This document shows, in pieces, positions 347 through 49,912 of a stretch of DNA of 64,000 bases. Source of the DNA: Octopus sinensis (Eukaryota); contig NC_043025.1 in the NCBI RefSeq assembly GCF_006345805.1, forward strand, positions 62,001 through 126,000, given 5' to 3'. Numbering within the stretch: position 1 is the first letter of the stretch; every line of letters begins with the position of its first letter. The position numbers and the translations under genes are program-made. A model generated the notes under the pieces. It was not told the origin of the DNA and did no database searches. It saw only the letters and a program-made list of their open reading frames with translations.

Positions 347-446
347 NNNNNNNNNNNNNNNNNNNNNNNNNNNNNNNNNNNNNNNNNNNNNNNNNNNNNN
401 NNNNNNNNNNNNNNNNNNNNNNNNNNNNNNNNNNNNNNNNNNNNNN
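347..446. other. Assembly gap (100 N)
   Basis: Run of exactly 100 N; sequence on either side need not be contiguous. Confidence 0.99.
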
Positions 447-5600: not shown

Positions 5601-8600
5601 CGCGAGAGATCGAGAAAGAAAGAGTGAGGAAATAAACGAGAGTAATAATGAGATAAATGAAGAGTGAGAGATAGGGCGAAGGATAAAAATAAACGAGAGG
5701 GAAAAGAAGAGAATAAGCGAGAGGGCGAGAAAGAAAGAGATAAAAAGAAACGAGAGGAAGAAAGATAGAATTAAAGTGTTAGAGATAGGAAGACGGATAA
5801 AAAGAAACGAGAGGGAGAAAAAAGAAAAAAGCGAGAGCGAGAAAAGAAGAGAAAGAAAAGGAACGAGATGAAGAAAGAATTAGAGTGAGGAAGAAGAATA
5901 AAAAGAAAACGAGAGGGATAAAAAGGAGAAAAAGCGAGAGCGAGAAAAAAGCGAGAGAAAGATAAACGTAGGAAGAAAGAGAGAAATGAAAGAGTTGAGA
6001 TAGAGGAAGAAGGATAAAAAGAAAACGATAGTAGGAATAAGGAAAAAATGAGAGCGAGAAAAGAAAGAGAGAGAAAAGAAACGAGAGGAAGAAAAGAGAG
6101 AAATGAAATAGTGAGATACAGGAGAGGAGAAAGAAGAAAAAAACGAGAGCGAGAAATAAAGAGATAGAAAAAGAAACGAGAGTATGAAAGAGAGAAATGA
6201 AAGATGAGAGAGAGGAAGAAGCATAAAAAAAACGATATGGAGAAAGAGAGAAATGAAAGGGTGATAGAGAGTAAGAAGAATAAAAATAAACGAGAGGTAG
6301 GAAGAAGGAAAAAAAAGCGAGAGAGTGTAGAAAAGAAGGAGAAAGAGATAAAAAAACGAGAGGAAGAAAGAGAGAAATGAAAGTGTGAGAGAGAGGAAAG
6401 GATAAAAAGAAAACGAGAGGGAGAAATAAGGAGAAAAATGCGAGAGGGCGAGAAAAGAAGAGAGAGAGAAAAGAAACGAGAGAAAGAAAGAGAGAAATGA
6501 AAGAGTGAGAGAGAGAAGAAGTAAAAAAGAAAACGAGAGCGAGAAAAGAGAGAGAAAAAGAAACGAGAGGATGAAAGAGAGAAATGAAATAGAGAGAGAG
6601 GAAGAAGGATAAAACGAAAACTATATGGAGAAGATAGAAATGAAAGGGTAGAGAGAGGAAGAAGAATAAAAAGCAAACGAGAGGTGGAAGAATGATAAAA
6701 GCTGAGAGAGTGAGAAAAGAAAGGAGAGAGAGAGAAAGAACCTAGAGAAAAAGAGAGAAATGAAAGTGTTGAGAGATAGAAAGGATAAATAAAAGAAACA
6801 AAAGAGGGAGAAAAGAATGAAAAAAAATGCGAGAGGGCGATAAAGAAGACAGAGAGAAAAAGAACGAGAGAAAGAAAGAGAGAAATTACGAGTGAGGGAA
6901 GGATAAGGATAAAAAGAAAAAAAACGAGAGGGATACTAAGGAAAAAACGCGTGAGATCGAGTAAAAGAAAGATGAGGAAAAGAAACGAGAGGAAGAAAAT
7001 ATAAATTAAAGAGTGAAGAGAGTAAGAAGTATAAAAAGAAAACGAGAAGGAGAAAGAAGGAGAAAAAAGCGAGAGGGCGAGAAAAACAAAGATAGATAGA
7101 AAAAAGAAACGAGATTATAAATATAAAAGCAAAATCGAGGGAGAAATAATTATAAATAAGCAAGAGATCTATAAAGAAAGAGAGATAAAAATAAACGAGA
7201 TGATGAAAGAGAGAATAAGATTGAGAGAGAGGATAAGGATTAAAATAAAACGATAGGGAGAAAGGATAAAAAATCGATAGGGTCGAGAAAAAAAGTAGAG
7301 AAAAAATAAACGAGATAAGAAATATTAATGAAATATTTGAGATAGAGGAAGAATTATAAAGAAACGATATTAGAAAGAATTATAAAAAGCTAGAGGGCGA
7401 GAAAAGAAAGAGAGATAAAAAAGAAACGAGATTAATAAATATAGAAATGAAAGTTTGAGAGAGAGAAATAATTATAAAATAAACGAGGGGAGAAAGAGGA
7501 GAAAGGTAAATAGAGATATAAATAAACAATAGAAAAAATAATAAATGAAATATTGTTAGAGAGGAGAAGAATGAAAAGACAACGAGATTATAAATAATTG
7601 ATAAAAATCGATAGATCTATAAAATAATAATATAAGAAACGAGATAAAAAATAGAGAAATGAATAGTTAGATAGATTGAATAATATAAAAAAACGATATT
7701 AATAAATAATTATGAAAAAATTGGATAGCGAGAAAAGAAAGGATATAAAATAAATTAGAGAGGAAAGAGGGAAATTAAATAGTGATAGATAGGAACAAGA
7801 ATAAAAAAAAAAGATATTATAAATAATTAAAAAATCTAGAGAGAAATAATAGAAAGAGAGGAAGAAATAAGAAATGAAGAATGAGTAGAGAGGAAGAAGG
7901 ATAAAATAAACGAGAGGGATAAGAGATATTAAAGGGGTGATATAGATATAATAATAAAAATCAAACGAGAGGTTAGAAAGAATACAAAAACCGAGAGGGT
8001 GAGAAATAAAGATATAGAAGAAAGAAACGATATTAAGAAATAGAAATTAAAGAGTTAGTGATATTAATAAGGATAAAAGAAAACGAGAGGGAAAGAAGGA
8101 AGAGATAAAAAGAAATCATTAGAGAGGAAGAAGGATTAAATAAAACGCGAGGAAGAAAGAAGGAGAAAAAAGTGAGTGAGCGAGTAAAGAAGGAGAGTTG
8201 AGAGAAAGAACGAGAGGAAGAAAGAGAGAAATGAAAGAGTGAGAGAGAGGAAGAAGGATAAAGAGAACGAGAAGGTGAAAGAAAGAGAATAAGCGAGAGA
8301 GCGAGAAAAATAGAGGAGAAAAAGAAATAGCGGTAAAAGAGAGAAATGAAAGAGTGAGAGAGAGGGAGAAGGATAAAAATAAAACGAGAGGAGAAATAAG
8401 GAGAAAAAAGTGAGAGAGCGCGAAAAGAAAGAGAGAGAAAAAGAAACGAGAGGAAGAATGTAGAAATGAAAGAGTGAGAGAGAGAAAATAATAAAAAAGA
8501 AAACAAAGGAATAGGAGAAAAAAATGAGAGAGCGAGAAAAAAAAGAGAGAGAAAATAAAAGAGAGGAAGACAGAGAGAAATGAAAGTGTGGAGAGGAAGA

Positions 8601-11600
8601 AGGATAAAATAAACGAGAGGGAGAAGGAAGGAGAAAAATGCGAGAGAGCGAGAAAGAAAGAGAGAGATAGAAGAAACGAGAGGAAAAGAGAGAAATTAAT
8701 AGTTAGAGAGAAGGATAAAAAGAAAACAATAGGGAATAGAAGGAGTTAAAAGTTGAGATACGAGAAAGGAAAGTTAGAAGATATATAAGAAACGATAAAA
8801 AGGATAGAAATGAAAGAGTTAGATAGATTAAGAAGGATAAAAGAACTAGGAAGAAAATAAGACGAAAGGGAAGAGATAAATAAAGAAAGAGAGAAAGACA
8901 ATGAGGAAATGAGAGAGAAAGAGAGAACAGACAAAGAAAACGATGAAAGAGAGGAAAGAAATAGATAGAGAGAGATAGGAGAAAGAAAACAGAGAAATAA
9001 TAATAGAAAAGGAAGATATAAAGAGAGATAGGGAGAAGGAAACCCGAAATAAAAAAGAGAGAAAGAATCAGATAGGTGAGAGAGCGAGAATTGAAAAGAG
9101 AAAGAGGAGAGGAAGAGATAAAGATTAAGATGATAGAAGAAGAGTACTGAGAGAAATAATAGAGAAAATGGGAGAGATAGAGAGAGAAGAAAGAGGAAAA
9201 CAAACACTGAAAGAGATAGAGAAATGAAATGAGGGGATAAAAGAGACTAAAAGGGATAAAGAGAATGAGAGAAAAGAAAGAGGGAGAAAGAGAGAAAAGA
9301 AAGGGAGAAGGCAAGAGAGGAGAGAAAATAAAAAAAGTAATCCCTTAAAGGGAGAATAGGAAAAGAGGAATAAGAGGGAAAGGAAAGGACAAAGAGACTG
9401 AAAGAAAGAGAGGGTTAGGGGAGAGAGAGAAAAGGAAATTGATGATAGTGAGAGGATAGAGAAGAGAAAAAATGCCAGAGAAATGAGATAACAGAGAGAA
9501 AGAGAAGAGAAAGAAGAGAGAAAGAGTAAAAGAAAAGGGAGAGATAAAGAAGAGAGAATAGAAAAGAGAGAAAAGCAGGAGAGAAAGGTAAATAGTGGGG
9601 GAGAAGGATAGAAGAGAAAAAGAGAGGGGGAAAAGAAGGAGGGAAAAGGGGAAAAAGAAAGTGAGAGATAAGTATAGAAGAGGAGATAAAGAGAAAAGAG
9701 ACAGAGAGGAAAGAGGGAATATAGGATAGAAAAGAGAGTGGAAATATAGAGAGAAGAAAGATACAAAAGAGAGGGAGAGAGGAAGTAATAAAAGAAAAGA
9801 GAGAGAGAAAAAAGTGGAAGAAGATAGAGAAAAGAGAAACAAGAGTAGAGACATAGAGAGAGAAAGATAGAAATAAATGTGAGGAATGAGAAAAGAAAGA
9901 GAGAGGAAAGGGATAGGAGAGAAAAGGACAAGAAAAGACATCAAAGAATATAGACAAGTAAAAGAGAAAGATTAAGAAAGAAAGAAAAGGCAATGAGAAG
10001 CACAGAGAGAAAAAGAGAGAAAGAGATAAAAGTAAAAGAGAAAGAGAGATGAAAAAGAAAAAGGTTGGGTGAAAGAGAGAAAAGGAATAGTGAAGGAGAC
10101 AGAGAGAAAAAGAAAGAAAGAAAGGTAATAGAGAGAGAGAGAGATAAAGAAAGAGAAAGAAAAAGAGAGAAACAGAGAAAAGTAAAATGGAAAAAGAGAG
10201 AAAAGAATGAGAGAGAGGGAAAAAGAGGAAAAAGAGAGAGGGAGAAAGAAAGAGAGAGAAGAAACAGAGAAAGAGGAAGGAAATGAGAGAGAGAAAGAGA
10301 GAAAAGGAAAATGGGAAAAGTGAGAAAAGAAAGAGAGAGAGAGTAAAAGAGACACGGAGAGAGAAGATAAGGGGAAAGAGAGAGAAGGTGAGAAAAGAAA
10401 GAGAAGGAAATAAATGACAGAGGGAGATAGAGAGAAAAGAAGGAGAAAGAGGAAAAAAACGAGAAAGAGAGTTAGAGACAACGAAAGAAAAGAGAGAGGG
10501 AGTAAAAGAGACACGGAGAGAGGAGAAGAAAGAAGATAGAAAAAGGGGAAAGAGAAAGTTAGAAAAGAAAGAGTAGGATAGAATGAAAGAGGGATTTAGA
10601 GAGTGAAAGATTAAGAGAAAGAGGAAAAAACAAGAAAGAGAGTGAGAGACAAAGAGAGAAAGAGAGAGAGAGAGTAAAGAGACACGGAGAGAGGAGAAAG
10701 AAAGATGAGAGAAAAAGGGAAGAGAGAGAAAGTGAGAAAAGAAAGAGAAGGAAAGAAATGAAAGAGGGAGATAAGAGAGAAAGAAGGAGAGGAAAGAGAA
10801 AGAAAACGAGAAAGAGAGTGAGAGACAAAGAGAGAAAAGAGAGAGAGAGAGAGACAAATGAATTTCTCTATTTCACATGTCCTCACTTTCTTCATTACAG
10901 ATTAATAAACCTATTGATGGAGTTGGACGAACTCCTTTAATGGAGGCCTGTTTTATGGGCGCCGATAGAAGAATCATCGACATTTTGATAAAAGCTGGGG
11001 CGAAGTTAGGAGCGAAAAACAGATGGGGTAATACAGCTTTACATTGGGCTGTGTTGAGGTAAGTTGAGAATCAAGTAAAATCTGCAGATGTGTTTTTGTT
11101 TGTAAATTTGTTGCAATTGCAGACACAGGTTCAATATCCAAAGATGCCATAGTTGTGGGACAACAGCACAACAGCAGACTAGCAAACAACAACAACAACA
11201 AGCTTCTCATTAGTCATTATTCAATCATAACAATCCCCATGATGATGATGATAACGGCGATGATGATGACGATGACGGTATTGATGATGTCGATCATCAT
11301 GATGGTGTTGTTGATTATGATGATGATGATGATGATGGAGGCGATGATGGTGATGCTGCTGCTGCTGATGATGATGATAATGATGATGATGATGATAATG
11401 ACGATGATGATGATGACGATGATGATGATGACTGTGATTATGCCGATGATGATGATTATAATTATAGTGGCGATGAATGATGATGATGACGACGATGATG
11501 ATGATGATTATGATGATGACGATGATAACCACGATGATGAAGCTGATGATGGTGATGGTGTTGTTGATGATGATTATGATGATGATGATCATGATGTTGA

Positions 11601-13225
11601 TGATAACGACGATGATGATGATGGTGATGGTGATGATGATGATTATGATTATGATGATGATGACGATAATGATGAATATGATGATGATGGTGATGATGAT
11701 GATAACGACGATGATGAAGATGATGAAGATATTGATAATAATGATGATGATGATGATGATAATGATGATGATGTGGATGATGATGATGACGACGATGATT
11801 ATTATGATTATCGTGATGATGACGATGATGATGATGATTATGATGTTATTATTATGATGATGATGATATTGATGAGGTTGATCTTGCTGTTGATGATGGT
11901 GTTGATGATGATGATAGATGCGATGATGATGATGATGATGATGAGGATGGTGATGATGGTGATGATGATGCCGATGATGATGATTATGATTATAGTGGTA
12001 ATGAATGATGATAATTTTGATTATGATGATATTGGAGATGTCGAAGATGATAATGATGATGATGGTGTTGGCAATGAGGGTGATGATGATGAAGGCTATG
12101 ATGATGATGATGGTGATGATGATGATAGTGATGATAATGATGGTGATGATGGTGATGATGATGATGATTATTATGTCAATGATGGAGCTGGTGGCAATGA
12201 TGATGATGGTAATGATGTTGATGAACATGATATTGATGATAATAGTGCAGGTGATGAAGATGGTGATGATGATGAAGGCGATGATGATGATGGCGATGAT
12301 GATGATGATGATTATGTCAATGATGGAGGTGGTGGCAATGAGGATGATGGTAATGATGTTGATGAACACGATATTGATGATAATAGTGCAGGTGATAATG
12401 ATGATGATGATGATGACGATGATGTTTCGTCTCAAAGCCAAAATATTTTCATATTTAATGTAAATTAGTCAATGTTTCTATCTTTTACTCTCAGTGGTCG
12501 ACCTCATGCTGTGGAGATCTTACTATCTCGGGGCAGTGAGGTAAGTATCTTATTTATATCCTTTCGTATGTTCTACTGAAGACGAAAGAATCTATTATGA
12601 GATTAATTTCGAAATTGATTCAATATAGAAATAACGAACTTTTTAAAAAACATTCTATCGTCCGGCTTCTCCCGATTTCAGTTCTTCGTGTTTTTTTTCT
12701 GTAGCCAGTAAATAATATGTGGAAATTGACGATTTAAAAGTCTCTTATCAGCAAATTGTCATTGAAATACTTTTCTTTAGCCCTTATTTATAAGTTGTTT
12801 ATAATTTAACAGTAAAGTTATTTTAATATGCTGCCACATTTTTTGATGGAATATTTTTCTGTAAAATAAACTTCATCCTATATTAGTATGTATATATATA
12901 TATATATATAAGTGAAGGCACGTGGCTAAGTGGTTAGGGCAATCGGCTCACGATCGGAAGGTTGTGAGTTCGATTCCCGGCGACGCGTTGTGTCCTTGAG
13001 CAAGACACTTTATTTCACGTTGCTCCAGTCCACTCAGCTGGCAAAAATGAGTTGTACCTGTATTTCAAAGGGTCTGCCTTGTCACACTCAGTGTCACGCT
13101 GAATCTCCCTGAGATACACGTGTCTGTGGATTGCTCAGTCACTTGCACGTTAATTTCATGAGCAGGCTGTTCCGTTGATCAGATCAGCGGGGACCCTCGT
13201 CGTCGTAACTGACGGAGTGCTCCTT

Positions 13226-29798: not shown

Positions 29799-32700
29799 AG
29801 ATATATCATCATCATCATTATCATCATCGTTTAACATCCGTTTTCCGTGCTAGCACGGGTTGGACGAAAATATATATAAGTAATATTCGTAGGCACGCCA
29901 ACATGAGTATCTGTTCGGATGGACTCTACTGCGAATGTTTAACCCCAAGAGAACACCTCCTCTAGCTAATTAACAATGCAAAGGTGCATCCGATTAATTG
30001 CGAGCAGGGGATCGAACCCCTACCATCTTATAGCAACAGAACCAGCAGACCAGGTCTGGTTTCGGGCTATTCCTGCCACTCTTCAGTACTGGATACCTCA
30101 TCTGCTAATCTGTGGAGACAGGATGTATATAATAAAGTATGTGTATATAAAGAAACCTCTGTAGATATATTTGTTCAGAAGAATGCGTTCGATGTTAGAA
30201 GTGAAATATATTTCTGGAATATATGCAGTTCACTGTGTGTCAACCAAATTTCTATGATGTATCAGGGTCAAGACAAACATTTATCAATGTATGTATGCAT
30301 GTGTGTGTATGTATGTATGTGTGTGTGTGTGTGAGCATGCCATTTAACTACAAAAATATCTGTATGTATGTAATTGTTTAAAGAAGAGTTTCTGCTCTAC
30401 TCTTGGTAGTTACTGATGTATCTTATAATATTCTCTATTCCGAACATGTAAATAATATAATATTTATTATAAATGAATGTTATTGATTGATGTTTCTGTT
30501 TTGTCCACAGATGTTTGTTGTGCAGAAAAATAAAGAGGCCACAACAAAAGTTCATCCTGTGAACACCTTCTGACATGTGAAGAATGTTCAAACGTTCCAC
30601 TTAAACGATGCCTGAGGTGTTTGAAACTGTGTAACAAGCAGAGGTCGAGTTGGTAAGAATATTCTTTGCTGATCTGTCTGTTTGTCCTGCTTGTCCCATT
30701 GCCTTATTGTGTAGAATAATATACTTCATGTTGTTATGTAGACAGAGGTCTGCCATAATCTGGCAGATTTATGATAAAAGGTGTTCCTAGTGTCTGTTCT
30801 CTGTAATAGTATATCTCTCACACTACATCCACTAAACATTGATTTTATCCAAGTAGGAAACATGTCACACTTCAAGAGGGTTGTAGTCTGCAACATAAAA
30901 ATAATGGAGGATTCTGCAAGATACTTAGTGAGTAACTGAAGTATCAATAAATCTCCATCAACTCTATAATTAATTATGAGTTATTAGAAGATAATTAAAT
31001 ACAACAGTACTTACAAGGACATCAGTGTCATCTTGGTAAAGTATTAAAATTAGTAGAATATTTTAAAGGAGTAAAATTATATGTCACTAGTTTGAGAGAC
31101 TTTAACACACAATTCCATGTTGTTATGTTTGTAATTGGAGGATATTAAGGCTAATAGAGACAGTTTTGTTTGTCAAGCAACCAGATCATGAAACCTTCAA
31201 ATATATCCTGAATGAGGTGACATTCTGGTGAACTGTGAAGTTAAATTAGGGATTATCAGCAACAATGTTTAACAAAAAGATTAGGTGTATGTATTACCTT
31301 CTTGAAGTGGTTGTGACATGTGTTTGTTGTTATATCTTTGATGAATAAATATGTTGACACTGGAATTAAACAGGTTGTTAGTGAAGATCAGGGTTTTGAG
31401 AATACATTTAGGGTCATAGATATAAGCAAGGAAACCAAAACCTACAGATTAACTGTTATTATGTGATATAATTACAGCATTGTTAGATTATGTAGGATAT
31501 CTTAACAGAAAGAGGAAATTTACAAAGATCAACTAGAGTTCGTATTGGAGCTAAATATTGGCTATTACATGGGTCCACTGTTGAAAGTATAAAAATATTG
31601 ACCAAAAGCATTATGATCGCTGGTTGGCCATTGATGATATGAATGTCTCTCAATAATAAAATATAGATTATTAATAAATATGAAGAAATTGTGCTATAAA
31701 TAACTATAAAACTTGGAAACACATATTTCAGAGAGTCCAAAGTTTGAAGAGAAGGGAATGCAGACTGTGGCAGAGACAGTTGATGAGTTTAAAATTAGAG
31801 ATCTTAATTAATTTCTATAGATTTTACATTCACCTAAGCTATTTTGCTTATTAGAATGGTGGAGAACAGATCCCATTTCTAATTTCCATTTGAAAGTTTA
31901 GCTCTAAAGTAATTGTATTAAAAATATTACTGAAATTTCATAAAGTCATGTTTAACATGTTTGGTCAAATGGATAAATTAAAAGCCACAATAGAGTTAAT
32001 ATTGTCTTCTATGGAACTATAATTTATGTTTTTTAGGTGTAAACTCGTGAGTTAATAAAATAGTTGTTTGTTTTTCTACTAAGATTTTTCGTAAGTTTTC
32101 TGATAGGTTATTCTTGATGTTGTTATGTAGCCAGATGTCTGTCGTAATATTTTGTATTTTCTGGGGTTGTGTACCCTCAATGTCTCTGGTTAGAATACAT
32201 TTTGTAGTTGTAAATTAGAAAATTCTAATTAAATGTTAACTCTGTATAAGAATATTCATCATGAACTTAATTTTATTAAATGTTAAATTAAATATTGAAC
32301 CATGAACATCTGTTTATATTTAAACAAATTATTGGTGTTTATACAAAATATACAATCAGAAATTGAATTTGACTTGAATACACAAATCCTTCTTTGTAAC
32401 TATATATAATATACACTTATTACATGTTTTGAACAAAACACATTACATCCATATAGTCATTTTTTCTCACTCTTGTTAGATTTTAGATGATATTAATGCT
32501 AAAAGAGGCACGGTTTTCTGAGTGTTTCACCCTTTGGTCTTGATTGTTGCGTTCAAATTATTTAATGAAAGATAGTCATTGTTATTTGACCAGGAAATGA
32601 ATTAATCATTAGTATTTGGCAGTGGACTTGGTTATATCTTTCTTCGTTTGCTCATGGAACTACCATAATATTAGCTGTGCTGAGACACAATCATATTCAT

Positions 32701-35700
32701 AGTAATGAAGGTTATATGTTCTTTACTCAGATTATATACAATCTATATTGATATCTAGTATTGTACCGTCAAGCACAGTGCTATTGTATCACATATATAC
32801 CCGATTATCATGATAATTAATAAGCTATAATTCATTAACTCTCTTACATTTGTATGTATGAAATGTTAACATATTTTGTCATAGGAACATTGTGTACCTT
32901 CACATTACATTTTATATCTTGGTAGGGATCATGTTGGGGAAGGGTGTATGGAATTTGGCTTGTGGAGATGTTTTTTAGGGGACAGATTGTGTGCGGGTTG
33001 GAGGGTATGCATATAAAGGACATGTCTTTATGGGTGCAGTTTTACTTAATTAGAGAGGAACGTTGATTAGTGAATTCTAGATATGAGAGGACAGTGCCAT
33101 GCCATAGATTTGGCAGTTATAAGAAAAGAAAGACAATGCTAAGAGAAAACTGTCATCAAGTGTTAATTAAATGAGATAATTGCAACATTGTTAGAATATT
33201 TAATGTGTTTTTAGAGAAGAGAGAGAGAGAGAGAGAGAGAGGGAGAGGGTGGATTTAGAAATGTTAGTCTGTTTTATTGTGGACATATTGAGCTACTACA
33301 TGGGACCACTGTAGAAAGTACAGAAATATTGACCAAAACCATAGTGGTCAACATTTGACCATTAACGACAGGAATTGAATGTCTCACAATAAAAAGATAG
33401 AGTTTAATAAAAATAAAGATAAAGAAAGTTTCTTTTTAAATGTAAAACTTGGAAATATTTATTTCAGAGGCTCCAAAGTTTGAAGACAGGTGTGTACAAA
33501 CAGAGGCTATATGTCAGGAATTAGGGGCTGCATCTCAGGCAATTGGTGAGTATAAAATAATAGTTCCCAATTGATTTCTGTAAGGTTTTCTTCCCCCGAG
33601 TATATTGTGCTTGAAAGAATAACTGAAAACAGCTTCCATTCCTATTTTCCAATTGAACGATTATCTGTATAATAATTGAATTAAAGATATCGATTTACTG
33701 AGAGTTTATGAAACACCCATTGAGGTTAATGCTGTTGGTAATAATGTTCAAATTAGAAGACACAATAGAGTTAATTTTGTCATTTGGTCACAGAACTCAT
33801 CATCATCATCATTTAACATCCGTTTCTTATCGTGGCATGGGTCGGACGATTTCACTGGCAAGGCAGTAGGCTGCGCCAGGCTCCAATGTGATCTGGCAAG
33901 GTTTCCACATATGTATGCCATTCCTAATGCCAACCAATCCGAGAGTGTGGTGGGTGCCTTTTACGTGCCACCGACACAGGAGCCAGTCGGGCTGGGGGCT
34001 GGCATCGACCACATTCGGATGGTGCTTTTTACGTGCCACCGGCACAGGGAACTAGTCAGGCGGCAGTGACAAGGACCTATGCTTCTATGGTACTTATAAC
34101 GTGACACAGGAACAGGTGCCAGTCAGGCGGCACTGGCATCGGTCACAACTACAATTTCCATTTTGATTTCGATCTTGAATTGCTTTTGATTTGTCATTTC
34201 TGTTATTGCACGGTGGACTATGATGAAAACGAGGGGTTTAGGAATGATCCCTAGTGAACTCCTACTTCTATCCGGAATTCTTCACTATACTCATTGCCAA
34301 TCCTCACCTTACTACAGGGCCTCTTCAACTCTTATAATCGCTCGTCAATCCCTAGTTTCCGCATTAGCTGTAAAAAGGATTCTATTAAATATTCCACTGA
34401 AATTTCATAAAATCAAGGTTAACGTGGTTGGTAAAATGGTTAAATAAGAAGACATAATAGAGTTAATGATGTCTTTTAGGACAGAGAACTAAAACATTTT
34501 GTTGTTTATTTGTAAACAGGTGAGGTAACGAGAAAGTTTTTGTTTCTTTTGCTACTAAGGTCTTTCCAAAGTTTTCTCATAGGTTATTGTTGTTGTTATT
34601 GTTATGTAGCCAGATGTCTGTCAGGATATGTTGTTTAGGTACCTACCCTGAATGTCTCAGGTCAGAATAACTTTGTTATAAATTAAAGAAATTAAAAATC
34701 AAATCTCTAAGATTGTAAGTATAATGATCATTAACGTTGATTAAATATTAAATTTAGTATTGAACGGTGAACATCTGTTTGCATTTAAACAAAACATTGG
34801 TGTTGACATAAATTATAAAGATAGGAATAAATATGAGTTCCCTGTGTGACTTGATCTCACAAATCCTTGTTTGTAACTATATATAATATACACTTATTAC
34901 ATTGTTTGAACAACATTTACCATCCATATAGTCATTCTTTTTCTCACACTTGTTAGATTTTAGATGATATTAATGCTAAAAGAGGCACAGTTTTCTGAAT
35001 GTTTCACCCTTTAGACTTGATTGTTGCGTTCAAATTATTTAATGAATGATAGTCATTGTTATTTGACCAGGAAATGAATTAATCATTAGTATTTGGCAGT
35101 GGACTTGGTTATATCTTTCTTCGTTTGCTCATGGAATTACCATAATATTAGCTGTGCTGAGACACAATCATATTCATAGTAATGAAGGCTATATGTTCTT
35201 TACTCAGATTATATACAATCTATATTGATATCTAGTATTGCACCGTCAATCACAGTGCCATTGTATCACATATATACCCAATTATCATGATAATTAATAA
35301 GCTATAATTCATTAACTCTCTTACATTTGTATGTCTGAAATGTAAACTTATTTTGCCATAGGAACATCCTGTACCCTCACCTTGCATTTTATATCTTCTT
35401 AGGGATCATGTTGGGGAAGGGTGTATGGAATTTGGCTTGTGGAGATGCTTTTTAGGGGACAGATTGTGTGCGGGTTGGAGGGTATGCATATAAAGGACAT
35501 GTCTTTATGGGCGCAGTTTTACTTAATTAGAGAGGAATGTTGATTAGTGAATTCTAGAGATGAGAGGACTGTGCCATGCCATAGATTTGGCAGAGTTATA
35601 AGAAAAGAAAGACAAAGCTAAGAGAAAACTGTCATCAAGTGTTAATTAAATGAGATAATTGCAACATTGTTAGAATATTTAATGTGTTTTTAGAGAGAGA

Positions 35701-38700
35701 GAGAGAGAGGGGGGGAGACGGTGGATTTAGGAATGTTAGTCTGTTTTATTGTGGACATATTGGGCTATTACATGGGACCACTGTAGAAAGTACAGAAATA
35801 TTGACCAAAACCATAATGGTCAACATTTGACCTGTAAGGCCACCAATTGAATGACTCACTATAACAAGATAGAGTTTAATAAAAGTAAAGATACAGACAT
35901 TTTAATATCAAATGTAAAACTTGGAAATATTTATTTCAGGGGCTCCAAAGTCTGAAGACAGGTGTGTAAAAAAAGAGGCTACATGTCAGGAATTAGGGGC
36001 TGCATCTCAGGCAATTGGTGAGTATAAAATAATAGTTCCCAATTGATTTCTGTAAGGTTTTCTTCCCCCGAGTATATAGTGCTTGAAAGAATAACTGAAA
36101 ACAGCTTCCATTCCTATTTTCCAATTGAACAATTATCTGTATAATAATTGAATTAAAGATATCGATTTACTGTGAGTTTATGAAATACCCATTGAGGTTA
36201 ATGCTGTTGGTAATAATGTTCAAATTAGAAGACACAATAGAGTTAATTTTGTCATTTGGTCACAGAACTCATCATCATCATCATCATCATCATTTAACAT
36301 CCGTTTCTTATGGTGGCATGGGTCGGACGATTTCACTGGTAAGGCAGTAGGCTGCGTCAGGCTGCAATGTGATCTGGCAAGGTTTCCACATATGTATGCC
36401 ATTCCTAACGACAACCACTTCGAGAGTGTGGTGGGTGCCTTTTACGTGCCACCGACACAGGAGCCAGTTGAAGTTGGGGCTGGCATTGTCCACGTTCGGA
36501 AGGTACTTTTTATGTGCCAACGGCACAGGGAACCAGTCAGGCGGCACTGGCAACAAATAATGTTTGAATGGTACTTATTATGTGCCACCGGCACGGGTGC
36601 CAGCCAGGCGGCACTGGCATCGGCCATAATTACAATTTGCATTTTGATTTCGATCTTGATTTGATTTTGATTTGTGATTTCTGGTTTTTGGTTTTACTTG
36701 ACTCAGAAATTCTTCTCAAGCGCAACTTATCACTCTGTGATTCAAGGGTACTTTTAAAAGGGGCTGGTTATGCGCCACTGGTATAGGCTACAGCTGTGAT
36801 CTCACTTCACTTGCCGAGTCCTCTTAATCACATCATATTTACAGAGGTCTCTGTCTCTTGCCATTACCTCTGTGAGGCCCAACGTTCGAAGGTCGTTTCA
36901 CCACGTCATCCCCTGTCTTCCTGGGTCACCCCTTTGCACGGGTTCTTTCCACTGTGAGGGTGTAACACTTCTTTCCACAGCTCTCCTCATCCATACCATG
37001 ACCATACCAGTGCAGTTGTCTCTCTTGTACATCACATCTGATGCTTCTTATGTCTAACACTTCTCTCAGGCCTCTTCACTCTGCCTTGTGTACACACTGA
37101 CATCGTTGCGTTCAAATTATTTAATAGAATATAGTCATTGTTATTTGACCGGGAAATGAATTAATCATTAGTATTTGGCAGTGGACTTGGTTATATCTTT
37201 CTTCGTTTGCTCATGGAACTACCATAATATTAGCTGTGCTGAGACACAATCATATTCATAGTAATGAAGGTTATATGTTCTTTACTCAGATTATGTACAA
37301 TCTATATTGATATCTAGTATTGCACCGTCAAGCACAGTGCCATTGTATCAAATACACTTGCGTCGGAAATTAATTAGCACTTCTCAAATTTCTACATTTT
37401 CTTACATTTTCTTAATTTAATTAACTTATTATCAGAAACGAACTCGTTTTTAATCAAAAATTTATTAAAACATATCCCAGCACACCACATAATTGATATT
37501 AATCGTGAAATTTAGTCAATATCTTGTTGCTCCTCCTTTGGCAGCAATGACAGCTACTACGCGGGTCGGCATGCTGTCTATGAGTGCCTGCAGGTACTGT
37601 GCAGGGATGGCCCCCATGCAGCAAGAAGTGCCCCAAACAGCTCGTGTCGGTTCCTGTATTGCTGCACATTCAAATCCCTACCCAATCGACTCCAGAGGTT
37701 CTCAATAGGGTTCAGGTCAGGTGACTGGCTAGCACGTACTCCTCGCCACCAAAGAGGTATCCCGTACTATCTCAACGTACTTTGCTGCGTTGATGTTGCC
37801 TTCGACGGCATAGAGCCACCCAACACAACTGTAGCTGAACGCCCCTCACACCATCAGACCACCCCCACCATGCTTCATGGTGAGCAAATCAAGGGTGCTA
37901 ATTAATTTCTGACGGTAGTGTATATACCCAATTATCAAGATAAATAATTAGCTATAATTCATTAACTCTCTTACATTTGTATGTTTGAAATGTAAACTTA
38001 TTTTGTCATAGGAACATTGTGTACCCTCACCTTACATTTTATATCTTGTTAGGGATCATGTTGGGAAAGGGTGTATGGAATTGGCTTGTTGTGGAGATGT
38101 TTTTTAGGGGACAGATTGTGTGCGGTTGGAGGGTATGCATATAAAGGACATGTCTTTATGGGTGCAGTTTTACTTAATAGAGAGGAATGTTGATTAGTGA
38201 ATTCTAGATATGAGAGGACTGTGCCATGCCATAAATTTGGCACAGTTATAAGAAAAGAAAGACAATGCTAAGAGAAAACTGTCATCAAGTGTTAATTAAA
38301 TGAGATAATTGCAACATTGTTAGAATATTTAATGTGTTTTTAGAGAGAGGAGAGAGAGAGGGAGAGGGTGGATTAGAGAAATGTTAGTCTGTTTTATTGG
38401 ACATATTGAGTTATTACATGGGACCACTGTAGAAAGTACAGAAATATTGACCAAAACCATAATGGTCAACATTTGACCATTAACAACAGGAATTGAATGT
38501 CTCACAATAAAAAGATAGAGTTTAATAAAAATAAAGATAAAGAAATTTTATTATTAAATGTAAAACTTGGAAATATTTATTTCAGAGGCTCCAAAGTTTG
38601 AAGACAGGTGTGTACAAACAGAGGCTATATGTCAGGAATTAGGGGCTGCATCTCAGGCAATTGGTGAGTATAAAATAATAGTTCCCAATTGATTTCTGTA

Positions 38701-41368
38701 AGGTTTTCTTCCCCCGAGTATATTGTGCTTGAAAGAATAACTGAAAACAGCTTCCATTCCTATTTTCCAATTGAACGATTATCTGTATAATAATTGAATT
38801 AAAGATATCGATTTACTGTGAGTTTATGAAATACCCATTGAGGTTAATGCTGTTGGTAATAATGTTCAAATTAGAAGACACAATAGAATTAATTTTGTCA
38901 TTTGGTCATGGAACTCATCATCATCATCATCGTTTAACATCCGTCTTTATAATAGCATGGGTCGGACGATTTCACTGGCAAGGCAGTAGGCTGCGCCAGG
39001 CTTCAATGTGATCTGGCAAGGTTTCCACATATGTATCCCATTCCTAATGCCAACCACTCCAAGAGTGTGGTGGGTGCCTTTTACTTGCCACCGACACAGG
39101 AGCCAGTCGGGGTGGGGGCTGGCATCGACCACATTCGGATGGTGCTTTTTACGTGCCACTGGCACAGGGAACTAGTCAGGCGGCAGTGACAAGGACCTAT
39201 GCTTCTATGGTACTTATAACGTGCCACAGGAACAGGTGCCAGTCAGGCGGCACTGGCATCGGTCACAACTACAATTTCCATTTTGATTTCGATCTTGAAT
39301 TGCTTTTGATTTGTCATTTCTCTTATTGCCTGGTGGACTATGATGAAAACGAGGGTTTTAGGAATGATCCCTAGTGAACTCCTAATTCTATCCGGAATTC
39401 TTCACTATACTCATTGCCGATCCTCACCTTACTACAGGGCCTCTTCAACTCTTATAATCGCTCGTCAATCCCTAGTTTCCGCATTAGCTGTAAAAAGGAT
39501 TCTATTAAATATTCCACTGAAATTTCATAAAATCAAGGTTAACGTGGTTGGTAAAATGGATAAATAAGAAGACACAATAGAGTTAATGATGTCTTTTAGG
39601 ACAGAGAACTAAAACATTTTGTTGTTTATTTGTAAACAGGTGAGTTAACAAGAAATATTTTCTTTCTTTTACTACTAAGGTCTTTCCTAAGTTTTCTGAT
39701 AGGTTATTGTTGTTGTTGTTGTTGTTGTTATGTAGCCAGATGTCTGTCATGATATGTTGTTTAGGTACGTACCCTGAATGTCTCAGGTCAGAATAACTTT
39801 GTTATAAATTAAAGACATTAAAAATGAAAGCTCTAAGATTATAAGTATAATGATCATTAACGTTGATTAAATATTAAATTTAGTATTGAACGGTGAACAT
39901 GTTTACATTTAAACAAAATATTGGCGTTGACATAAAATACAAAGATAGGAATTAAATATGAGTTCCCTGTGTGACTTGATCTCACAAATCCTTGTTTGTA
40001 ACTATATATAATATACACTTATTACATTGTTTGAACAACATTTACCATCCATATAGTCATTCTTTTTCTCACACTTGTTAGATTTTAGATGATATTAATG
40101 CTAAAAGAGGCACAGTTTTCTGAGTGTTTCACCCTTTGGTCTTGATTGTTGCATTCAAATTATTTAATGGAAGTTAGTCATTGTTATTTGACCAGGAAAT
40201 GAATTAATCATTAGTATTTGGCAGTGGTTATCTTTCTTCTTTTGCTCATGGAACTACCATAATATTAGCTGTGCTGAGACACAATCATATTCATTGTAAT
40301 GAAGGTTATATGTTCTTTACTCAGATTATATACAATCTATATTGATATCTAGTATTGCACCGTCAAGCACAGTGCCATTTCATCACATATATACCCAGTT
40401 ATCATGATAATTAATAAGCCATAATTCATTAACTCTCTTACATTTGTATGTCTGAAATGTAAACATATTTTGTCATAGGAACATCGTGTACCCTCACCTT
40501 ACATTTTATATCTTGTTAGGGATCATGTTGGGGAAGGGTGTATGGAATTTGGCTTGTGGAGATGTTTTTTAGGGGACAGATTGTGTGCGGGTTGGAGGGT
40601 ATGCATATAAAGGACATGTCTTTATGGGCTCAGTTTTACTTAATTAGAGAGGAATGTTGATTAGTGAATTCTAGAGATGAGAGGACTGTGCCATGCCGTA
40701 GATTTGGCAGAGTTATAAGAAAAGAAAGACAAAGCTAAGAGAAAACTGTCATCAAGTGTTAATTAAATGAGATAATTGCAACATTGTTAGAATATTTAAT
40801 GTGTTTTTAGAGAGAGAGAGGGTGGATATAGAAATGTTAGTCTGTTTTATTGTGGACATATTGGGCTATTACATGGGACCACTGTAGAAAGTACAGAAAT
40901 ATTGACCAAAACCATAATGGTCAACATTTGACCATTAATGACAGGAATTGAATGTCTCACAATAAAAAGATAGAGTTTAATAAAAATAAAGATAAAGAAA
41001 TTTTATTATTAAATGTAAAACTTGGAAATATTTATTTCAGAGGCTCCAAAGTTTGAAGACAGGTGTGTACAAACAGAGGCTATATGTCAGGAATTAGGGG
41101 CTGCATCTCAGGCAATTGGTGAGTATAAAATAATAGTTCCCAATTGATTTCTGTAAGGTTACTTCCCCCGAGTATATTGTGCTTGAAAGAATAACTGAAA
41201 ACAGCTTCCATTCCTATTTTCCAATTGAACGATTATCTGTATAATAATTGAATTAAAGATATCGATTTACTGTGAGTTTATGAAATACCCATTGAGGTTA
41301 ATGCTGTTGGTAATAATGTTCAAGTTAGAAGACACAATAGAATTAATTTTGTCATTTGGTCATGGAAC

Positions 41369-41408
<40 letters not shown>

Positions 41409-44400
41409 TTAACATCCGTTTCTTATGGTGGCATGGGTCGGACGATTTCACTGGCAAGGCAGTAGGCTGCGCCAGGCTCCAATGTGATCTGGCAAGGTTT
41501 CCACATATGTATGCCATTCCTAATGCCAACCACTCCAAGAGTGTGGTGGGTGCCTTTTACTTGCCACCGACACAGGAGCCAGTCGGTGTGGGGGCTGGCA
41601 TCGACCACGTTCGGATGGTGCTTTTTACGTGCCACCGGCACAGGGAACTAGTCAGGCGGCAGTGACAAGGACCTATGCTTCTATGGTACTTATAACGTGA
41701 CACAGGAACAGGTGCCAGTCAGGCGGCACTGGCATCGGTCACAACTACAATTTCCATTTTGATTTCGATCTTGAATTGCTTTTGATTTGTCATTTCTCTT
41801 ATTGCCTGGTGGACTATGATGAAAACGAGGGGTTCAGGAATGATCCTAGTGAACTCCTACTTCTATCCGGAATTCTTCACTATACTCATTGCCGATCCTC
41901 ACCTTACTACAGGGCCTCTTCAACTCTTATAATCGCTCGTCAATCCCTAGTTTCCGCATTAGCTGTAAAAAGGATTCTATTAAATATTCCACTGAAATTT
42001 CATAAAATCAAGGTTAACGTGGTTGGTAAAATGGTTAAATAAGAAGACATAATAGAGTTAATGATGTCTTTTAGGACAGAGAACTAAAACATTTTCTTGT
42101 TTATTTGTAAACAGGTGAGTTAACGAGAAAGATTTTCTTTCATTTACTACTAAGGTCTTTCCTAAGTTTTCTGATAGGTTATTGTTGTTGTTGTTGTTAT
42201 GTAGCCAGATGTCTGTCATGATATGTTGTTTAGGTACCTACCCTGAATGTCTCAGGTCAGAATAACTTTGTTATAAATTAAAGACATTAAAAATAAAATC
42301 TCTAAGATTATAAGTATAATGATCATTAACGTTGATTAAATATTAAATTTAGTATTGAACGGTGAACATCTGTTTGCATTTAAACAAAATATTGGTGTTG
42401 ACATAAAATATAAAGATAGGAATTAAATATGAGTTCCCTGTGTGACTTGATCTCACAAATCCTTGTTTGTAACTATATATAATATACACTTATTACATTG
42501 TTTGAACAACATTTACCATCCATATAGTCATTCTTTTTCTCACTCTTGTTAGATTTTAGATGATATTAATGCTAAAAGAGGCACAGTTTTCTGAATGTTT
42601 CACCCTTTGGTCTTGATTGTTGCGTTCAAATTATTTAATGAAAGATAGTCATTGTTATTTGACCAGGAAATGAATTAATCATTAGTATTTGGCAGTGGAC
42701 TTGGTTATATCTTTCTTCGTTTGCTCATGGAACTACCATAATATTAGCTGTGCTGAGACACAATCATATTCATTGTAATGAAGGTTATATGTTCTTTACT
42801 CAGATTATATACAATCTATATTGATATCTAGTATTGCACCGTCAGGCACAGTGCCATTGTATCACATATATACCCAATTATCAAGATAATTAATAAGCTA
42901 TAATTCATTAACTCTCTTACATTTGTATGTATGAAATGTAAGCTTATTTTGTCATAGGAGCATCGTGTACCCTCACCTTACATTTTATATCTTGTTAGGG
43001 ATCATGTTGGGGAAGGGTGTATGGAATTTGTGGAGATGTTTCTTAGGGGACAGATTGTGTGCGGGGTGGATGGTATGCACATAAAGGACATGCCTTGATG
43101 GCCTCGATGTTACTTAGCCAGTTGGGTCTTTTCAAGCACAGAAAATTGCTGATTGTCTCAGTCGTTTTAGTTATCTTCCGTGTGAAGCTCAGCATCTGAA
43201 CATCATTTCTCACCACTTTGCCCCATGTCTTCCTCAGTCTTCCTCTTCCTCAGATTCTCTCCACATTTAGAGATCCGCATCTCTTTATGCTGATCACCTC
43301 ATCCATATGCATCACATAACCATACTATGAAAGATCTCTCTTTTGAACTCTACATCGGATGACTCTTATACCCAGATTTTCTCTTAAGACATTTCCACTG
43401 CGACTTACCTGAACACTGATGTTGTACATCCAGTGGAGCATGCTGGCTTCATTTGCCTCCGACCCTTTGCATGTCTTCTATCTTCACAACCTATCTTTCA
43501 TTATTGTGTTGTACATCTGTCCGTACACAAGTCTCATACAATCTGCTTTCCACTCTTAGGGAGAAGCCCTTCGTTACCTACAGAGTGGGGAGATTTGGGA
43601 CGGTTAATCTTGACTATTGGTTATAGGAATATTTCACAATTATAAAATATCGATGTTCATTAAATAAATTTTAATATAAAGTATAATCTTGGAAATATTT
43701 ATTTCAGCAAGGCCAATATTTGAAGACAAAGAGGTCCAGACAGTAGAAGGGCCACGTGGTGAGTATAGAATGACATTACATAATTGATTTCTATAAATTT
43801 TAGCTTTTACTGAGCTATTTTGGTCAATAGAATGACCGAGAACAGGTTCCAATGTTATATTTCATTCGAATGCTTAGCTATAAAGAAATTCTGTTCTTCT
43901 ACAACAACACGAATATCCAATAAATGTACTTTATGCAAACATCAGTTACTCATTCACTCGCAGAAAGAAAGATACAAAAATTAAATATAAACCCTGAAAC
44001 GGTTCTCTCCCGTTAAGGAGAATATTCGCCCTGTTTGTCATCTCATTGTACTCATTCATTCTCTCTCTCTCACTCATGCTCTTTCTCTCCGTCTTTTCAA
44101 GAAAGTTGCTGGTTAAAAGTTTCAATACAATAAATGATATCATCTTCATCTTTTCTCATCTGCTCTCCATGCTCCCATACACTAGGTGGGTCATCACTGT
44201 CCAAGTCAGTTGTATCTGAAATTACTGTCAACCGTCATTTGTTGAGGAAAACATTGCAGCTTTTCTAAGGTGGTAGACCCTTTCTAACCCCAACCACTTT
44301 ATAAAGGGTCGTGGGTATATTTTATTGTCGCACAAGCATTAGAAATGATCATCAATTTCCCAACAATATCAAACGTTCCTTTCAAACTTGTGGTGTCATC

Positions 44401-49912: not shown

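What the first reader, a model, noticed from the sequence alone, without database searches (positions are those of the whole stretch)
31400..48500. Symmetric phase 1-1 cassette exons amplified by repeated tandem duplication
Seen: every linker exon is a multiple of 3 nt with phase 1 at both ends, so any subset can be spliced in frame. Four young near-identical 2.5-kb units sit among older diverged units sharing the same intron landmarks (aaaacttggaaatatttatttcag). Inference: ongoing unequal crossing-over, probable copy-number polymorphism and combinatorial splicing of linker length.
Basis: partly seen in the sequence, partly recalled or inferred. Interest (0 to 1): 0.78.

Follow-up and report, generated by a model that had tools for sequence, protein, structure and literature searches.

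The report
Amplified in-frame linker exons, octopus gene
An octopus gene that joins ankyrin repeats, a RING finger and a Death domain carries a tandem array of 2.5-kb units, each holding one small exon that can be spliced in or out without breaking the reading frame; this is a clean example of a known way genes grow and vary, not a new kind of system.

Summary
Window 31.4-48.5 kb holds eight homologous exon units on the + strand. Four are young 78-nt exons (26 aa) spaced 2455-2646 nt apart, in units 88-95% identical. Three are older exons of 51, 51 and 48 nt. The eighth is the 72-nt first Death-domain exon. All are multiples of 3 and open in phase 1.

Two corrections. Two of the three older exons lack canonical splice sites: 31732 has donor AT and 45553 has acceptor AA. 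Both defects recur in other octopus loci. The RING exon upstream (30511-30652) has three frameshifting indels, so this copy as assembled cannot translate into the array.

The gene belongs to a family found only in Octopus, made of ankyrin repeats, a RING finger, a linker and a Death domain, and labelled "MIB2-like". Annotated isoforms of paralogues differ by whole cassettes. Cassette number differs between loci (0, 3, 4, 4, 5).

Young units are 92-99% identical between paralogues whose flanks are only 65-75% identical. RING and Death similarity are uncorrelated across the family. The array therefore also looks like a site of exchange between paralogues.

Verdict: a new member of a known kind (tandem exon duplication, phase 1-1 exon shuffling). 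Interest is moderate.

The parts
28237..28412 (+). Last ankyrin-repeat exon (CCTALNLK...LPPQ). It ends in phase 2.
   Evidence: tblastn to P0019 and P0025 at 88%; AG/GT sites; Pfam Ank hits.
30511..30652 (+). RING-finger exon, 142 nt. It carries three frameshifting indels relative to the intact 140-nt exon of O. vulgaris locus L002. Read from the ankyrin exons, the frame stops inside this exon.
   Evidence: Alignment to L002: A5 versus A3, CC versus CCC, CTG versus CC. tblastn needs three frames to cover it. As-assembled translation ends ...[16 protein letters not shown].
31732..31782 (+). Old cassette A, 51 nt ([17 protein letters not shown]). Open in phase 1, but the donor is ATGAGT, so it is probably a dead exon.
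   Evidence: The same AT donor occurs in O. vulgaris L002 and O. sinensis L003.
31898..43116 (+). Young tandem array of about 4.5 units of roughly 2.5 kb. Units are 88-95% identical to one another.
   Evidence: Self-BLAST. Exon spacing is 2472, 2646 and 2455 nt. The conserved core runs from -650 to +600 around each exon.
33468..33545 (+). Young cassette 1, 78 nt, phase 1-1 ([26 protein letters not shown]).
   Evidence: AG/GT sites, open only in phase 1. 100% match to the cassettes of P0019 and P0003.
35940..36017 (+). Young cassette 2, 78 nt, phase 1-1 ([26 protein letters not shown]). It has 5 differences from the other three, all non-synonymous.
38586..38663 (+). Young cassette 3, 78 nt, phase 1-1. 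Identical to cassette 1.
41041..41118 (+). Young cassette 4, 78 nt, phase 1-1. Identical to cassette 1.
43708..43758 (+). Old cassette B, 51 nt, phase 1-1 ([17 protein letters not shown]), with intact AG/GT sites.
   Evidence: 94% identical to the optional cassette of O. sinensis P0004, which is absent in isoform P0008. Also present in P0047 and P0059.
45553..45600 (+). Old cassette C, 48 nt ([16 protein letters not shown]). The acceptor is CAA instead of CAG. The next AG lies 2 nt downstream and would break the frame, so this is probably a dead exon.
   Evidence: The same AA acceptor occurs in O. vulgaris L001 and O. sinensis L005.
48103..48174 (+). Death-domain exon 1, 72 nt, phase 1-1 ([24 protein letters not shown]). 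The exon and its flanking introns are homologous to the cassette units.
   Evidence: Self-BLAST 33058-33787 versus 47735-48399 at 66.5%; eight-way alignment A1; AG/GT sites.
49713..49912 (+). Death-domain exon 2 with the stop codon at 49910-49912. It starts in phase 1.
   Evidence: tblastn at 86-91% to P0001, P0004 and P0014. The conceptual splice of cassettes and Death exons gives an open frame to the stop.

Best explanation
The region is the linker of an octopus gene built from ankyrin repeats, one RING finger, a linker and a Death domain.

Shown:
- Every intron from the RING exon to the last Death exon is phase 1, and each exon between them is a multiple of 3.
- The linker exons and the first Death exon, with their flanking introns, are paralogues of one another.
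- One unit type, a 78-nt exon in a unit of about 2.5 kb, has been amplified to four copies here.
- Other loci carry different copy numbers.
- Older copies have lost splice sites, so cassettes are born and die.
- The young units are far more alike between paralogous genes than the sequence around them is.

Inferred:
- Amplification and loss occur by unequal homologous recombination between units.
- The same recombination, or gene conversion, between arrays of different paralogues homogenises them and recombines RING modules with Death modules.
- Because all cassettes are phase 1-1, transcripts can include any subset of the splice-competent ones. This would give a low-complexity, probably helical or flexible spacer of variable length between the E3 RING and the Death domain.
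- The copy in this window, as assembled, is probably a pseudogene or carries assembly errors in its RING exon. Its own cassettes may therefore not be translated.
For: - Landmark 24-mer: 7 matches against 0 expected.
- Tandem units 88-95% identical, older units 66-72%.
- All 8 exons are 3n and open in phase 1. The conceptual splice is open through to the Death stop codon.
- Alignment A1 shows exon and intron homology that includes Death exon 1.
- Family membership: hits only in Octopus; Pfam Ank, zf-C3HC4_3 and Death.
- AF2 model of paralogue P0050: Death domain pLDDT about 90, cassettes pLDDT 28-67 and helical. Foldseek top hits are RIPK1, AnkG, RAIDD and FADD death domains, TM-score 0.6-0.78.
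- Isoforms differing by whole cassettes. P0001 and P0002 map exactly onto the L001 exons. The O. vulgaris annotation derived alternative forms with PASA from Iso-Seq and RNA-seq (PMC10700109).
- Copy number is 0, 3, 4, 4 or 5 in five loci. A 99.5% identical unit pair exists in L002.
- All 16 young cassettes from 4 loci keep AG/GT sites and nearly invariant splice flanks.
- Young units are 92-99% identical between loci, while flanks are 65-75% identical.
- The window follows L002 up to about 43.1 kb, and follows L001 and L005 from about 43.5 kb.
- RING and Death identities are uncorrelated (r = 0.10). For example, P0007 and P0065 have 100% identical RINGs and 41% identical Death domains.
Against: - No transcript or read data for this window were available.
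- The RING exon here is frameshifted, so the ankyrin reading frame stops before the array.
- Substitutions among young cassettes run about 9 non-synonymous to 3 synonymous, roughly the neutral ratio. There is no sign of purifying selection on the peptide.
- Isoform models over near-identical tandem exons can be inflated by ambiguous read mapping.
- The mosaic relation to L001 and L002 could partly reflect a chimeric join inside the repeats in one assembly.
- Isoforms inflate the pair counts in the RING-versus-Death comparison.
Confidence: 0.75

Rival explanations
1. This copy is a dead gene. The RING exon frameshifts are real, the cassette array and Death exons are no longer translated, and the array drifts neutrally. 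It would then be a fossil of the family mechanism rather than a working cassette system.
For: - Three indels in 142 nt of the RING exon, against none in the neighbouring ankyrin exons.
- No Met-initiated frame leads from the RING exon into the cassettes.
- No annotated protein matches the window's ankyrin exons closely; the best is 89%.
- The non-synonymous to synonymous ratio in the cassettes is about neutral.
- Two dead older exons.
Against: - Two of the three indels sit in homopolymer runs (A5 versus A3, CC versus CCC). That is typical of long-read assembly error, and the O. vulgaris assembly is nanopore-based.
- All four young cassettes, cassette B and both Death exons keep splice sites and open frames.
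- Paralogues with the same architecture are annotated as coding.
Confidence: 0.35
2. Assembly artefact. The four units, or the join between the L002-like 5' half and the L001-like 3' half, result from mis-assembly of a repeat. The copy number and arrangement in the window would then be unreliable.
For: - The switch between best-matching reference loci lies inside the repeated array.
- Arrays of 2.5-kb repeats are hard to assemble.
Against: - Units differ by 5-12% and carry unit-specific indels and a variant long unit, so they are not false copies of one sequence.
- Arrays with the same long variant unit exist in O. vulgaris L002 and O. sinensis L004.
- The architecture of a CLLCRNK-type RING, 26-aa cassettes, the ARPIF cassette and Death type A is annotated at other loci (P0047, P0059).
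- O. sinensis L005 is colinear with the window from 41958 to beyond 55 kb.
Confidence: 0.15
3. The cassettes are real exons but constitutive. The annotated isoforms that differ by cassettes are artefacts of short reads aligned ambiguously to near-identical tandem exons.
For: Three of the four window cassettes are identical, and flanking splice regions are invariant. Junction reads therefore cannot be placed uniquely.
Against: - Isoforms also differ at cassettes that are distinguishable in sequence: P0043, P0044 and P0045 each carry a different one, and LOC115225502 shows several subsets.
- The 17-aa ARPIF cassette is unique within its gene and is optional (P0004 versus P0008).
- The O. vulgaris models used Iso-Seq long reads.
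Confidence: 0.1
4. The 2.5-kb unit is a mobile element carrying a splice-competent exon. It would have inserted independently into several family genes rather than duplicating in place.
For: Near-identical units occur in genes whose flanks are only 65-75% identical.
Against: - The unit is homologous to the resident Death exon 1 unit and to the older in-place cassettes.
- Copies are always head-to-tail, in the same intron position and on the same strand.
- No copies occur elsewhere in the 64-kb window.
- No terminal repeats were noticed.
Confidence: 0.03

Closest known systems
Tandem exon duplication giving alternatively spliced cassette exons (Kondrashov and Koonin 2001; Letunic, Copley and Bork 2002, from my own knowledge; see also PMC2592719, found)
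   Same: Adjacent homologous exons with homologous flanking introns, lengths in multiples of 3, and optional inclusion in annotated isoforms.
   Different: Here up to 5 young copies are amplified together with 2.5 kb of intron. Inclusion looks combinatorial rather than mutually exclusive.
Phase 1-1 module shuffling (Patthy's class 1-1 symmetric exons; from my own knowledge)
   Same: All introns across the linker and around Death exon 1 are phase 1. RING and Death modules appear recombined between paralogues.
   Different: Classical 1-1 shuffling concerns extracellular modules of vertebrate proteins. This case involves an intracellular RING-Death protein within one lineage-specific family.
Copy-number-variable intragenic repeats such as LPA kringle IV-2, and the nebulin and titin PEVK repeat exons (from my own knowledge)
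   Same: Multi-kb tandem units with in-frame exons, copy number changed by unequal crossing-over, and spacer length varied by exon choice.
   Different: No population data here. The repeat encodes a 26-aa low-confidence helical linker rather than a folded domain.
Mind bomb E3 ligases MIB1 and MIB2, the name the databases give these proteins
   Same: Ankyrin repeats followed by a C-terminal zf-C3HC4_3 RING.
   Different: No MIB/HERC2 or ZZ domains and only one RING. A cassette linker and a C-terminal Death domain are present, which MIB proteins lack.
Dscam-type clusters of mutually exclusive exons
   Same: Tandem arrays of duplicated exons that generate isoform diversity.
   Different: Several cassettes are included together (P0046, P0050), so splicing is not mutually exclusive. 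No docking or selector RNA structure was sought or seen.

Membership tests
Tandem-duplicated symmetric cassette exons | Two or more adjacent exons homologous to each other, together with their flanking introns | tested here: met
   Self-BLAST; eight-way alignment A1; landmark 24-mer 7 matches against 0 expected.
Tandem-duplicated symmetric cassette exons | Exon length a multiple of 3 with the same intron phase on both sides | tested here: met
   Lengths 78, 78, 78, 78, 51, 51, 48 and 72 nt, all open in phase 1. The conceptual splice is open.
Tandem-duplicated symmetric cassette exons | Functional splice sites on every copy | tested here: not met
   Five of seven linker exons and Death exon 1 have AG/GT sites. 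31732 has an AT donor and 45553 has an AA acceptor.
Tandem-duplicated symmetric cassette exons | Transcripts that include different subsets of the copies | tested here: inconclusive
   Annotated isoforms of paralogues differ by whole cassettes. There are no transcript data for the window's own copy.
Copy-number-variable intragenic repeat (LPA KIV-2 type) | Different repeat numbers between individuals of one species | not testable with these tools
   Only differences between loci and assemblies could be seen: 0, 3, 4, 4 and 5 copies.
Death domain superfamily (PF00531) | Significant match to the Death profile, or a six-helix death fold | tested here: met
   The window's own domain scores 14.5 bits, below the 22.6 cut-off. 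However, 21 of 30 family members match, best E = 2.6e-11. The AF2 model of P0050, a paralogue with a closely similar Death domain, has pLDDT about 90. It superposes on RIPK1, AnkG, RAIDD and FADD death domains at TM-score 0.6-0.78.
Mind bomb (MIB1/MIB2) E3 ligases | N-terminal MIB/HERC2 and ZZ domains | tested here: not met
   No such Pfam families appear in full-length members (precomputed lists; scan).
Mind bomb (MIB1/MIB2) E3 ligases | Ankyrin repeats followed by C-terminal zf-C3HC4_3 RING(s) | tested here: met
   Ank families at E = 1e-30. zf-C3HC4_3 in 29 of 30 members. The window's own RING exon is frameshifted.
Dscam-type mutually exclusive exon cluster | Exactly one exon of the cluster per mRNA | tested here: not met
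   P0046 carries 3 cassettes, P0050 carries 4 and P0001 carries 3.

The most novel reading that the evidence does not exclude
The phase-1 cassette array may be more than a length-variable linker. It could be the recombination hub of a large Octopus-specific family of ankyrin-RING-Death proteins. Near-identical 2.5-kb intron-exon units shared by paralogues would let unequal recombination and gene conversion swap RING (E3) modules and Death (adaptor) modules between genes. Cassette choice and donor read-through (the recurrent ...GEYKIIVPN* tails) would add isoforms of different length, or isoforms lacking the Death domain. Together this would be a germline diversification system for death-domain signalling, possibly in immunity.
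Probability: 0.25. Interest if true: 0.7.

Novelty: new member of a known kind. Interest (0 to 1): 0.42.

Why it matters
The locus shows several textbook processes together and in progress: exon duplication, the birth and death of cassette exons, concerted evolution, and module shuffling through symmetric phase-1 introns. The setting is an intracellular RING-Death protein family that seems confined to Octopus and has not been described in the papers I could search.

If the isoform and recombination inferences hold, the family would be a useful model. It could show how linker length and domain combinations diversify in an expanded signalling family. It also warns annotators that such loci give truncated, split or chimeric gene models.

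Tried and rejected
- Source of the window. No annotated protein matches the window's ankyrin exons exactly; the best is 89%. Look-ups of P0019, P0056, P0050, P0046 and P0059 were not on record. The species is therefore given only as the Octopus vulgaris/sinensis group.
- Pfam on three concatenated cassettes gave only sub-threshold noise.
- Interspersed repeats as drivers. The unit shares only a 62-nt fragment with the rest of the window, so no flanking transposable element could be implicated.
- Linker structure. The AF2 model gives only low-confidence helices (pLDDT 28-67), so no fold claim is made.
- Literature. Searches for octopus with MIB2 and death domain, and for tandem symmetric exon arrays, found nothing on this family.
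- Selection on the cassettes. With 10 variable sites in 78 nt over 16 copies, the 9:3 non-synonymous to synonymous count is uninformative.
- Docking or selector RNA pairing. By eye, the conserved acceptor and donor flanks share only 5-6 nt of complementarity. I did not pursue it.
- False duplication was rejected because the units differ by 5-12%.
Full report
WHAT THE WINDOW IS. The window is AT-rich animal DNA full of microsatellites. Translated exons on the + strand hit only Octopus proteins labelled "E3 ubiquitin-protein ligase MIB2-like" or "MIB1-like".

The gene has these parts:
- Ankyrin-repeat exons, including 10898-11059, 14941-15075, 26402-26608 and 28237-28412. Pfam Ank scores E = 1e-30.
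- One RING-finger exon at 30511-30652.
- The linker region named in the finding.
- A two-exon Death domain at 48103-48174 and 49713-49912.

The Death assignment rests on three results. Pfam PF00531 matches 21 of 30 family members. An AF2 model of paralogue P0050 has pLDDT about 90 over the Death domain. Foldseek's top hits are the RIPK1, ankyrin-G, RAIDD and FADD death domains, with TM-score 0.6-0.78. The proteins lack the MIB/HERC2 and ZZ domains, so they are not true Mind bomb orthologues.

CHECK OF THE OBSERVATION. The 24-nt landmark occurs 7 times at up to 3 mismatches, against 0 in shuffles. Self-BLAST shows a head-to-tail array from 31898 to 43116, about 4.5 units. Unit pairs are 88.1-94.8% identical, and older units match at 66-72%.

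| Exon | Coordinates | Length | Splice sites | Peptide |
|---|---|---|---|---|
| Old A | 31732-31782 | 51 nt | AG / **AT** | [17 protein letters not shown] |
| Young 1 | 33468-33545 | 78 nt | AG / GT | [26 protein letters not shown] |
| Young 2 | 35940-36017 | 78 nt | AG / GT | [26 protein letters not shown] |
| Young 3 | 38586-38663 | 78 nt | AG / GT | identical to young 1 |
| Young 4 | 41041-41118 | 78 nt | AG / GT | identical to young 1 |
| Old B | 43708-43758 | 51 nt | AG / GT | [17 protein letters not shown] |
| Old C | 45553-45600 | 48 nt | **AA** / GT | [16 protein letters not shown] |
| Death exon 1 | 48103-48174 | 72 nt | AG / GT | [24 protein letters not shown] |

The young exons are spaced 2472, 2646 and 2455 nt apart and are open only in phase 1. 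Young 2 differs from the others at five positions, all non-synonymous. All eight exons are multiples of 3 and open in phase 1. All length differences (27, 3, 21 nt) are in frame. Splicing the five splice-competent cassettes to the Death exons gives one open frame to the stop codon. The core observation therefore holds and is far beyond chance.

TWO CORRECTIONS.
- Old A has donor ATGAGT and old C has acceptor CAA. For old C the next AG is 2 nt downstream and would break the frame. Both defects are shared with other loci: the AT donor with O. vulgaris L002 and O. sinensis L003, and the AA acceptor with O. vulgaris L001 and O. sinensis L005. They are therefore old pseudo-exons and not part of a freely combinable set. 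L002 has a further cassette with a dead TT donor. Cassettes are born by duplication and die by splice-site decay.
- The RING exon is 142 nt here against 140 nt in the intact O. vulgaris exon. It has three indels: A5 versus A3, CC versus CCC, and CTG versus CC. Read from the last ankyrin exon, which ends in phase 2, the frame stops inside the RING exon. No Met-initiated frame leads from it into the cassettes. Either this copy is a pseudogene or the assembly has indel errors; two of the three indels lie in homopolymer runs. The neighbouring ankyrin exons carry no indels, while window-versus-L002 introns show 0.6% gap openings. That leans weakly towards real decay.

ORIGIN OF THE CASSETTES. Alignment A1 shows that all seven linker exons and Death exon 1 share both the acceptor-side landmark and a donor-side motif (GATTTCTATA...). 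It also shows exon-internal similarity, and the 78-nt type differs from the 51-nt type by one 27-nt in-frame block. BLAST aligns 33058-33787 with 47735-48399 across the exon. The linker is therefore built from serial duplicates of the unit that carries the first Death-domain exon. The direction of descent is an inference.

COMPARISON WITH OTHER LOCI. Five related loci were fetched.

| Locus | Source | 78-nt cassettes | Notes |
|---|---|---|---|
| Window | Octopus vulgaris/sinensis group | 4 | RING exon frameshifted; Death type A |
| L001 | O. vulgaris GCA_951406725.2 | 3 | Different RING type; same Death type as the window |
| L002 | O. vulgaris, same scaffold, 2.8 Mb away | 5 | Same RING type as the window; different Death type |
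| L003 | O. sinensis contig | contig ends after old cassette A | Colinear with window 14667-32538 |
| L004 | O. sinensis contig | 4 | Third Death type |
| L005 | O. sinensis contig | 0 | Colinear with window 41958-55389 and the terminal satellite |

L005 carries the partial unit, the ARPIF cassette, the dead 48-nt exon and the same Death exons. In L002 two units are 99.5% identical over 2160 nt. These results support repeated and recent changes in unit number. Together with the 5-12% divergence between the window's units, they argue against a false assembly duplication.

EXCHANGE BETWEEN PARALOGUES. In 578-nt cores, young units from different loci differ by 0-9%. The sequences flanking the arrays in those same loci are only 65-75% identical or do not align.

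In 500-nt steps the window follows L002 at 94-99% up to about 43.1 kb. It follows L001 at 96-99.6% from about 43.5 kb, and both loci match inside the array.

At the protein level, RING and Death identities are uncorrelated across 32 family proteins (r = 0.10). There are 53 pairs with Death at least 85% but RING at most 45% identical, and 49 pairs the other way round. For example, P0007 and P0065 have 100% identical RINGs and 41% identical Death domains. Isoforms inflate these counts.

Between the window and L001, 12 of the 16 differences in 48901-50210 lie inside Death exon 2. That fits a short conversion tract or diversifying selection.

I conclude, as inference, that arrays are homogenised and that RING and Death modules are recombined across the phase-1 linker. 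A chimeric join in one assembly cannot be excluded for the window itself. However, the same architecture is annotated at other loci (P0047, P0059).

SPLICING. No transcript data could be reached for the window. Annotated paralogues give indirect support:
- O. vulgaris P0001 (3 cassettes) and P0002 (2 cassettes) map exactly onto the L001 exons. That annotation built its alternative forms with PASA from Iso-Seq and RNA-seq (PMC10700109).
- O. sinensis P0046 has three cassettes, while P0043, P0044 and P0045 have one each, a different one in each. P0050, P0049, P0048 and P0047 have 4, 3, 2 and 1+1.
- Six isoforms of LOC115225502 carry different subsets of distinguishable 17-aa cassettes.
- P0004, P0008 and P0011 show the ARPIF cassette, and even Death exon 1, as optional.

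Many models end by read-through of a cassette donor (...GEYKIIVPN*), giving products without a Death domain.

Among 16 young cassettes from four loci, all keep AG/GT sites. The 30 nt on the acceptor side are nearly invariant and the 30 nt on the donor side are invariant. The most conserved stretch of the unit is +51 to +300, and the exon's 5' half is the most variable part of the core.

The AF2 model gives only low-confidence helices for the cassettes. A flexible or helical spacer is the most that can be said.

VERDICT. The finding is real. It is best described as an intragenic tandem array of symmetric phase 1-1 cassette exons in an Octopus-specific ankyrin-RING-Death family. The array evolves by unequal recombination, with birth and death of cassettes and with exchange between paralogues. 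This is a new member of a well-known kind: tandem exon duplication, class 1-1 exon shuffling, and copy-variable intragenic repeats. Duplication dynamics are supported. Combinatorial splicing is supported only through paralogue annotations. Polymorphism within a species is untested.

Noticed in passing
window 30511-30652: The RING-finger exon has three 1-2 nt indels relative to the intact O. vulgaris (L002) exon; O. sinensis gene model P0038 (locus L003) also has an intact RING. The ankyrin reading frame therefore ends in this exon. This is either pseudogenisation or long-read homopolymer error.
   Followed up: partly
window 49713-49912 versus L001: Twelve of the 16 substitutions in a 1.3-kb stretch fall inside Death exon 2. 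The exon differs by about 6% and the flanking introns by about 0.4%. This suggests a short gene-conversion tract from another paralogue, or diversifying selection.
   Followed up: partly
window 33546-33574 and the same offset after each young cassette; proteins P0019, P0041, P0022, P0029, P0055, P0079, P0084, P0098: Reading through the cassette donor gives a short conserved tail (GEYKIIVPN*). Many annotated family models end this way, giving isoforms without a Death domain. The 30 nt after the donor are invariant in 16 units.
   Followed up: partly
window 15697-22127: A 6.4-kb (GAT)n array lies inside an intron of the gene. It is absent from the O. sinensis contig L003 and apparently shorter in O. 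vulgaris L002.
   Followed up: partly
window 3864-10850: Intron 1 holds about 7 kb of strongly purine-rich satellite (periods of 59, 122 and 181 nt; GC skew up to +0.8). The O. vulgaris gene model P0041 starts with a probably spurious N-terminus translated from the equivalent repeat ([21 protein letters not shown]).
   Followed up: partly
window 55307-62022 and 62493-64000: A 6.7-kb (TA)n tract (GC 6-10%) is followed by a 184-nt satellite of 8 copies at 89% identity. The satellite is also present downstream of the related O. sinensis locus L005.
   Followed up: no
window 36683-37920: A variant segment, more GC-rich, makes the second-to-third cassette interval longer (2646 nt). The same long variant occurs at the matching position in L002 and L004 (intervals of 2683 and 2640 nt), and part of the segment also matches L001. 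Some units are therefore positionally orthologous between loci.
   Followed up: partly
window 347-446 and 11239-12424: A 100-N scaffold gap, and a 1.2-kb (ATG)n microsatellite in an intron.
   Followed up: no
L002 46111-46161: Another family cassette (NRTFEDKETQTLAEPV) has a dead donor, TTGAGT. This is further evidence that old cassettes decay through splice-site loss.
   Followed up: no
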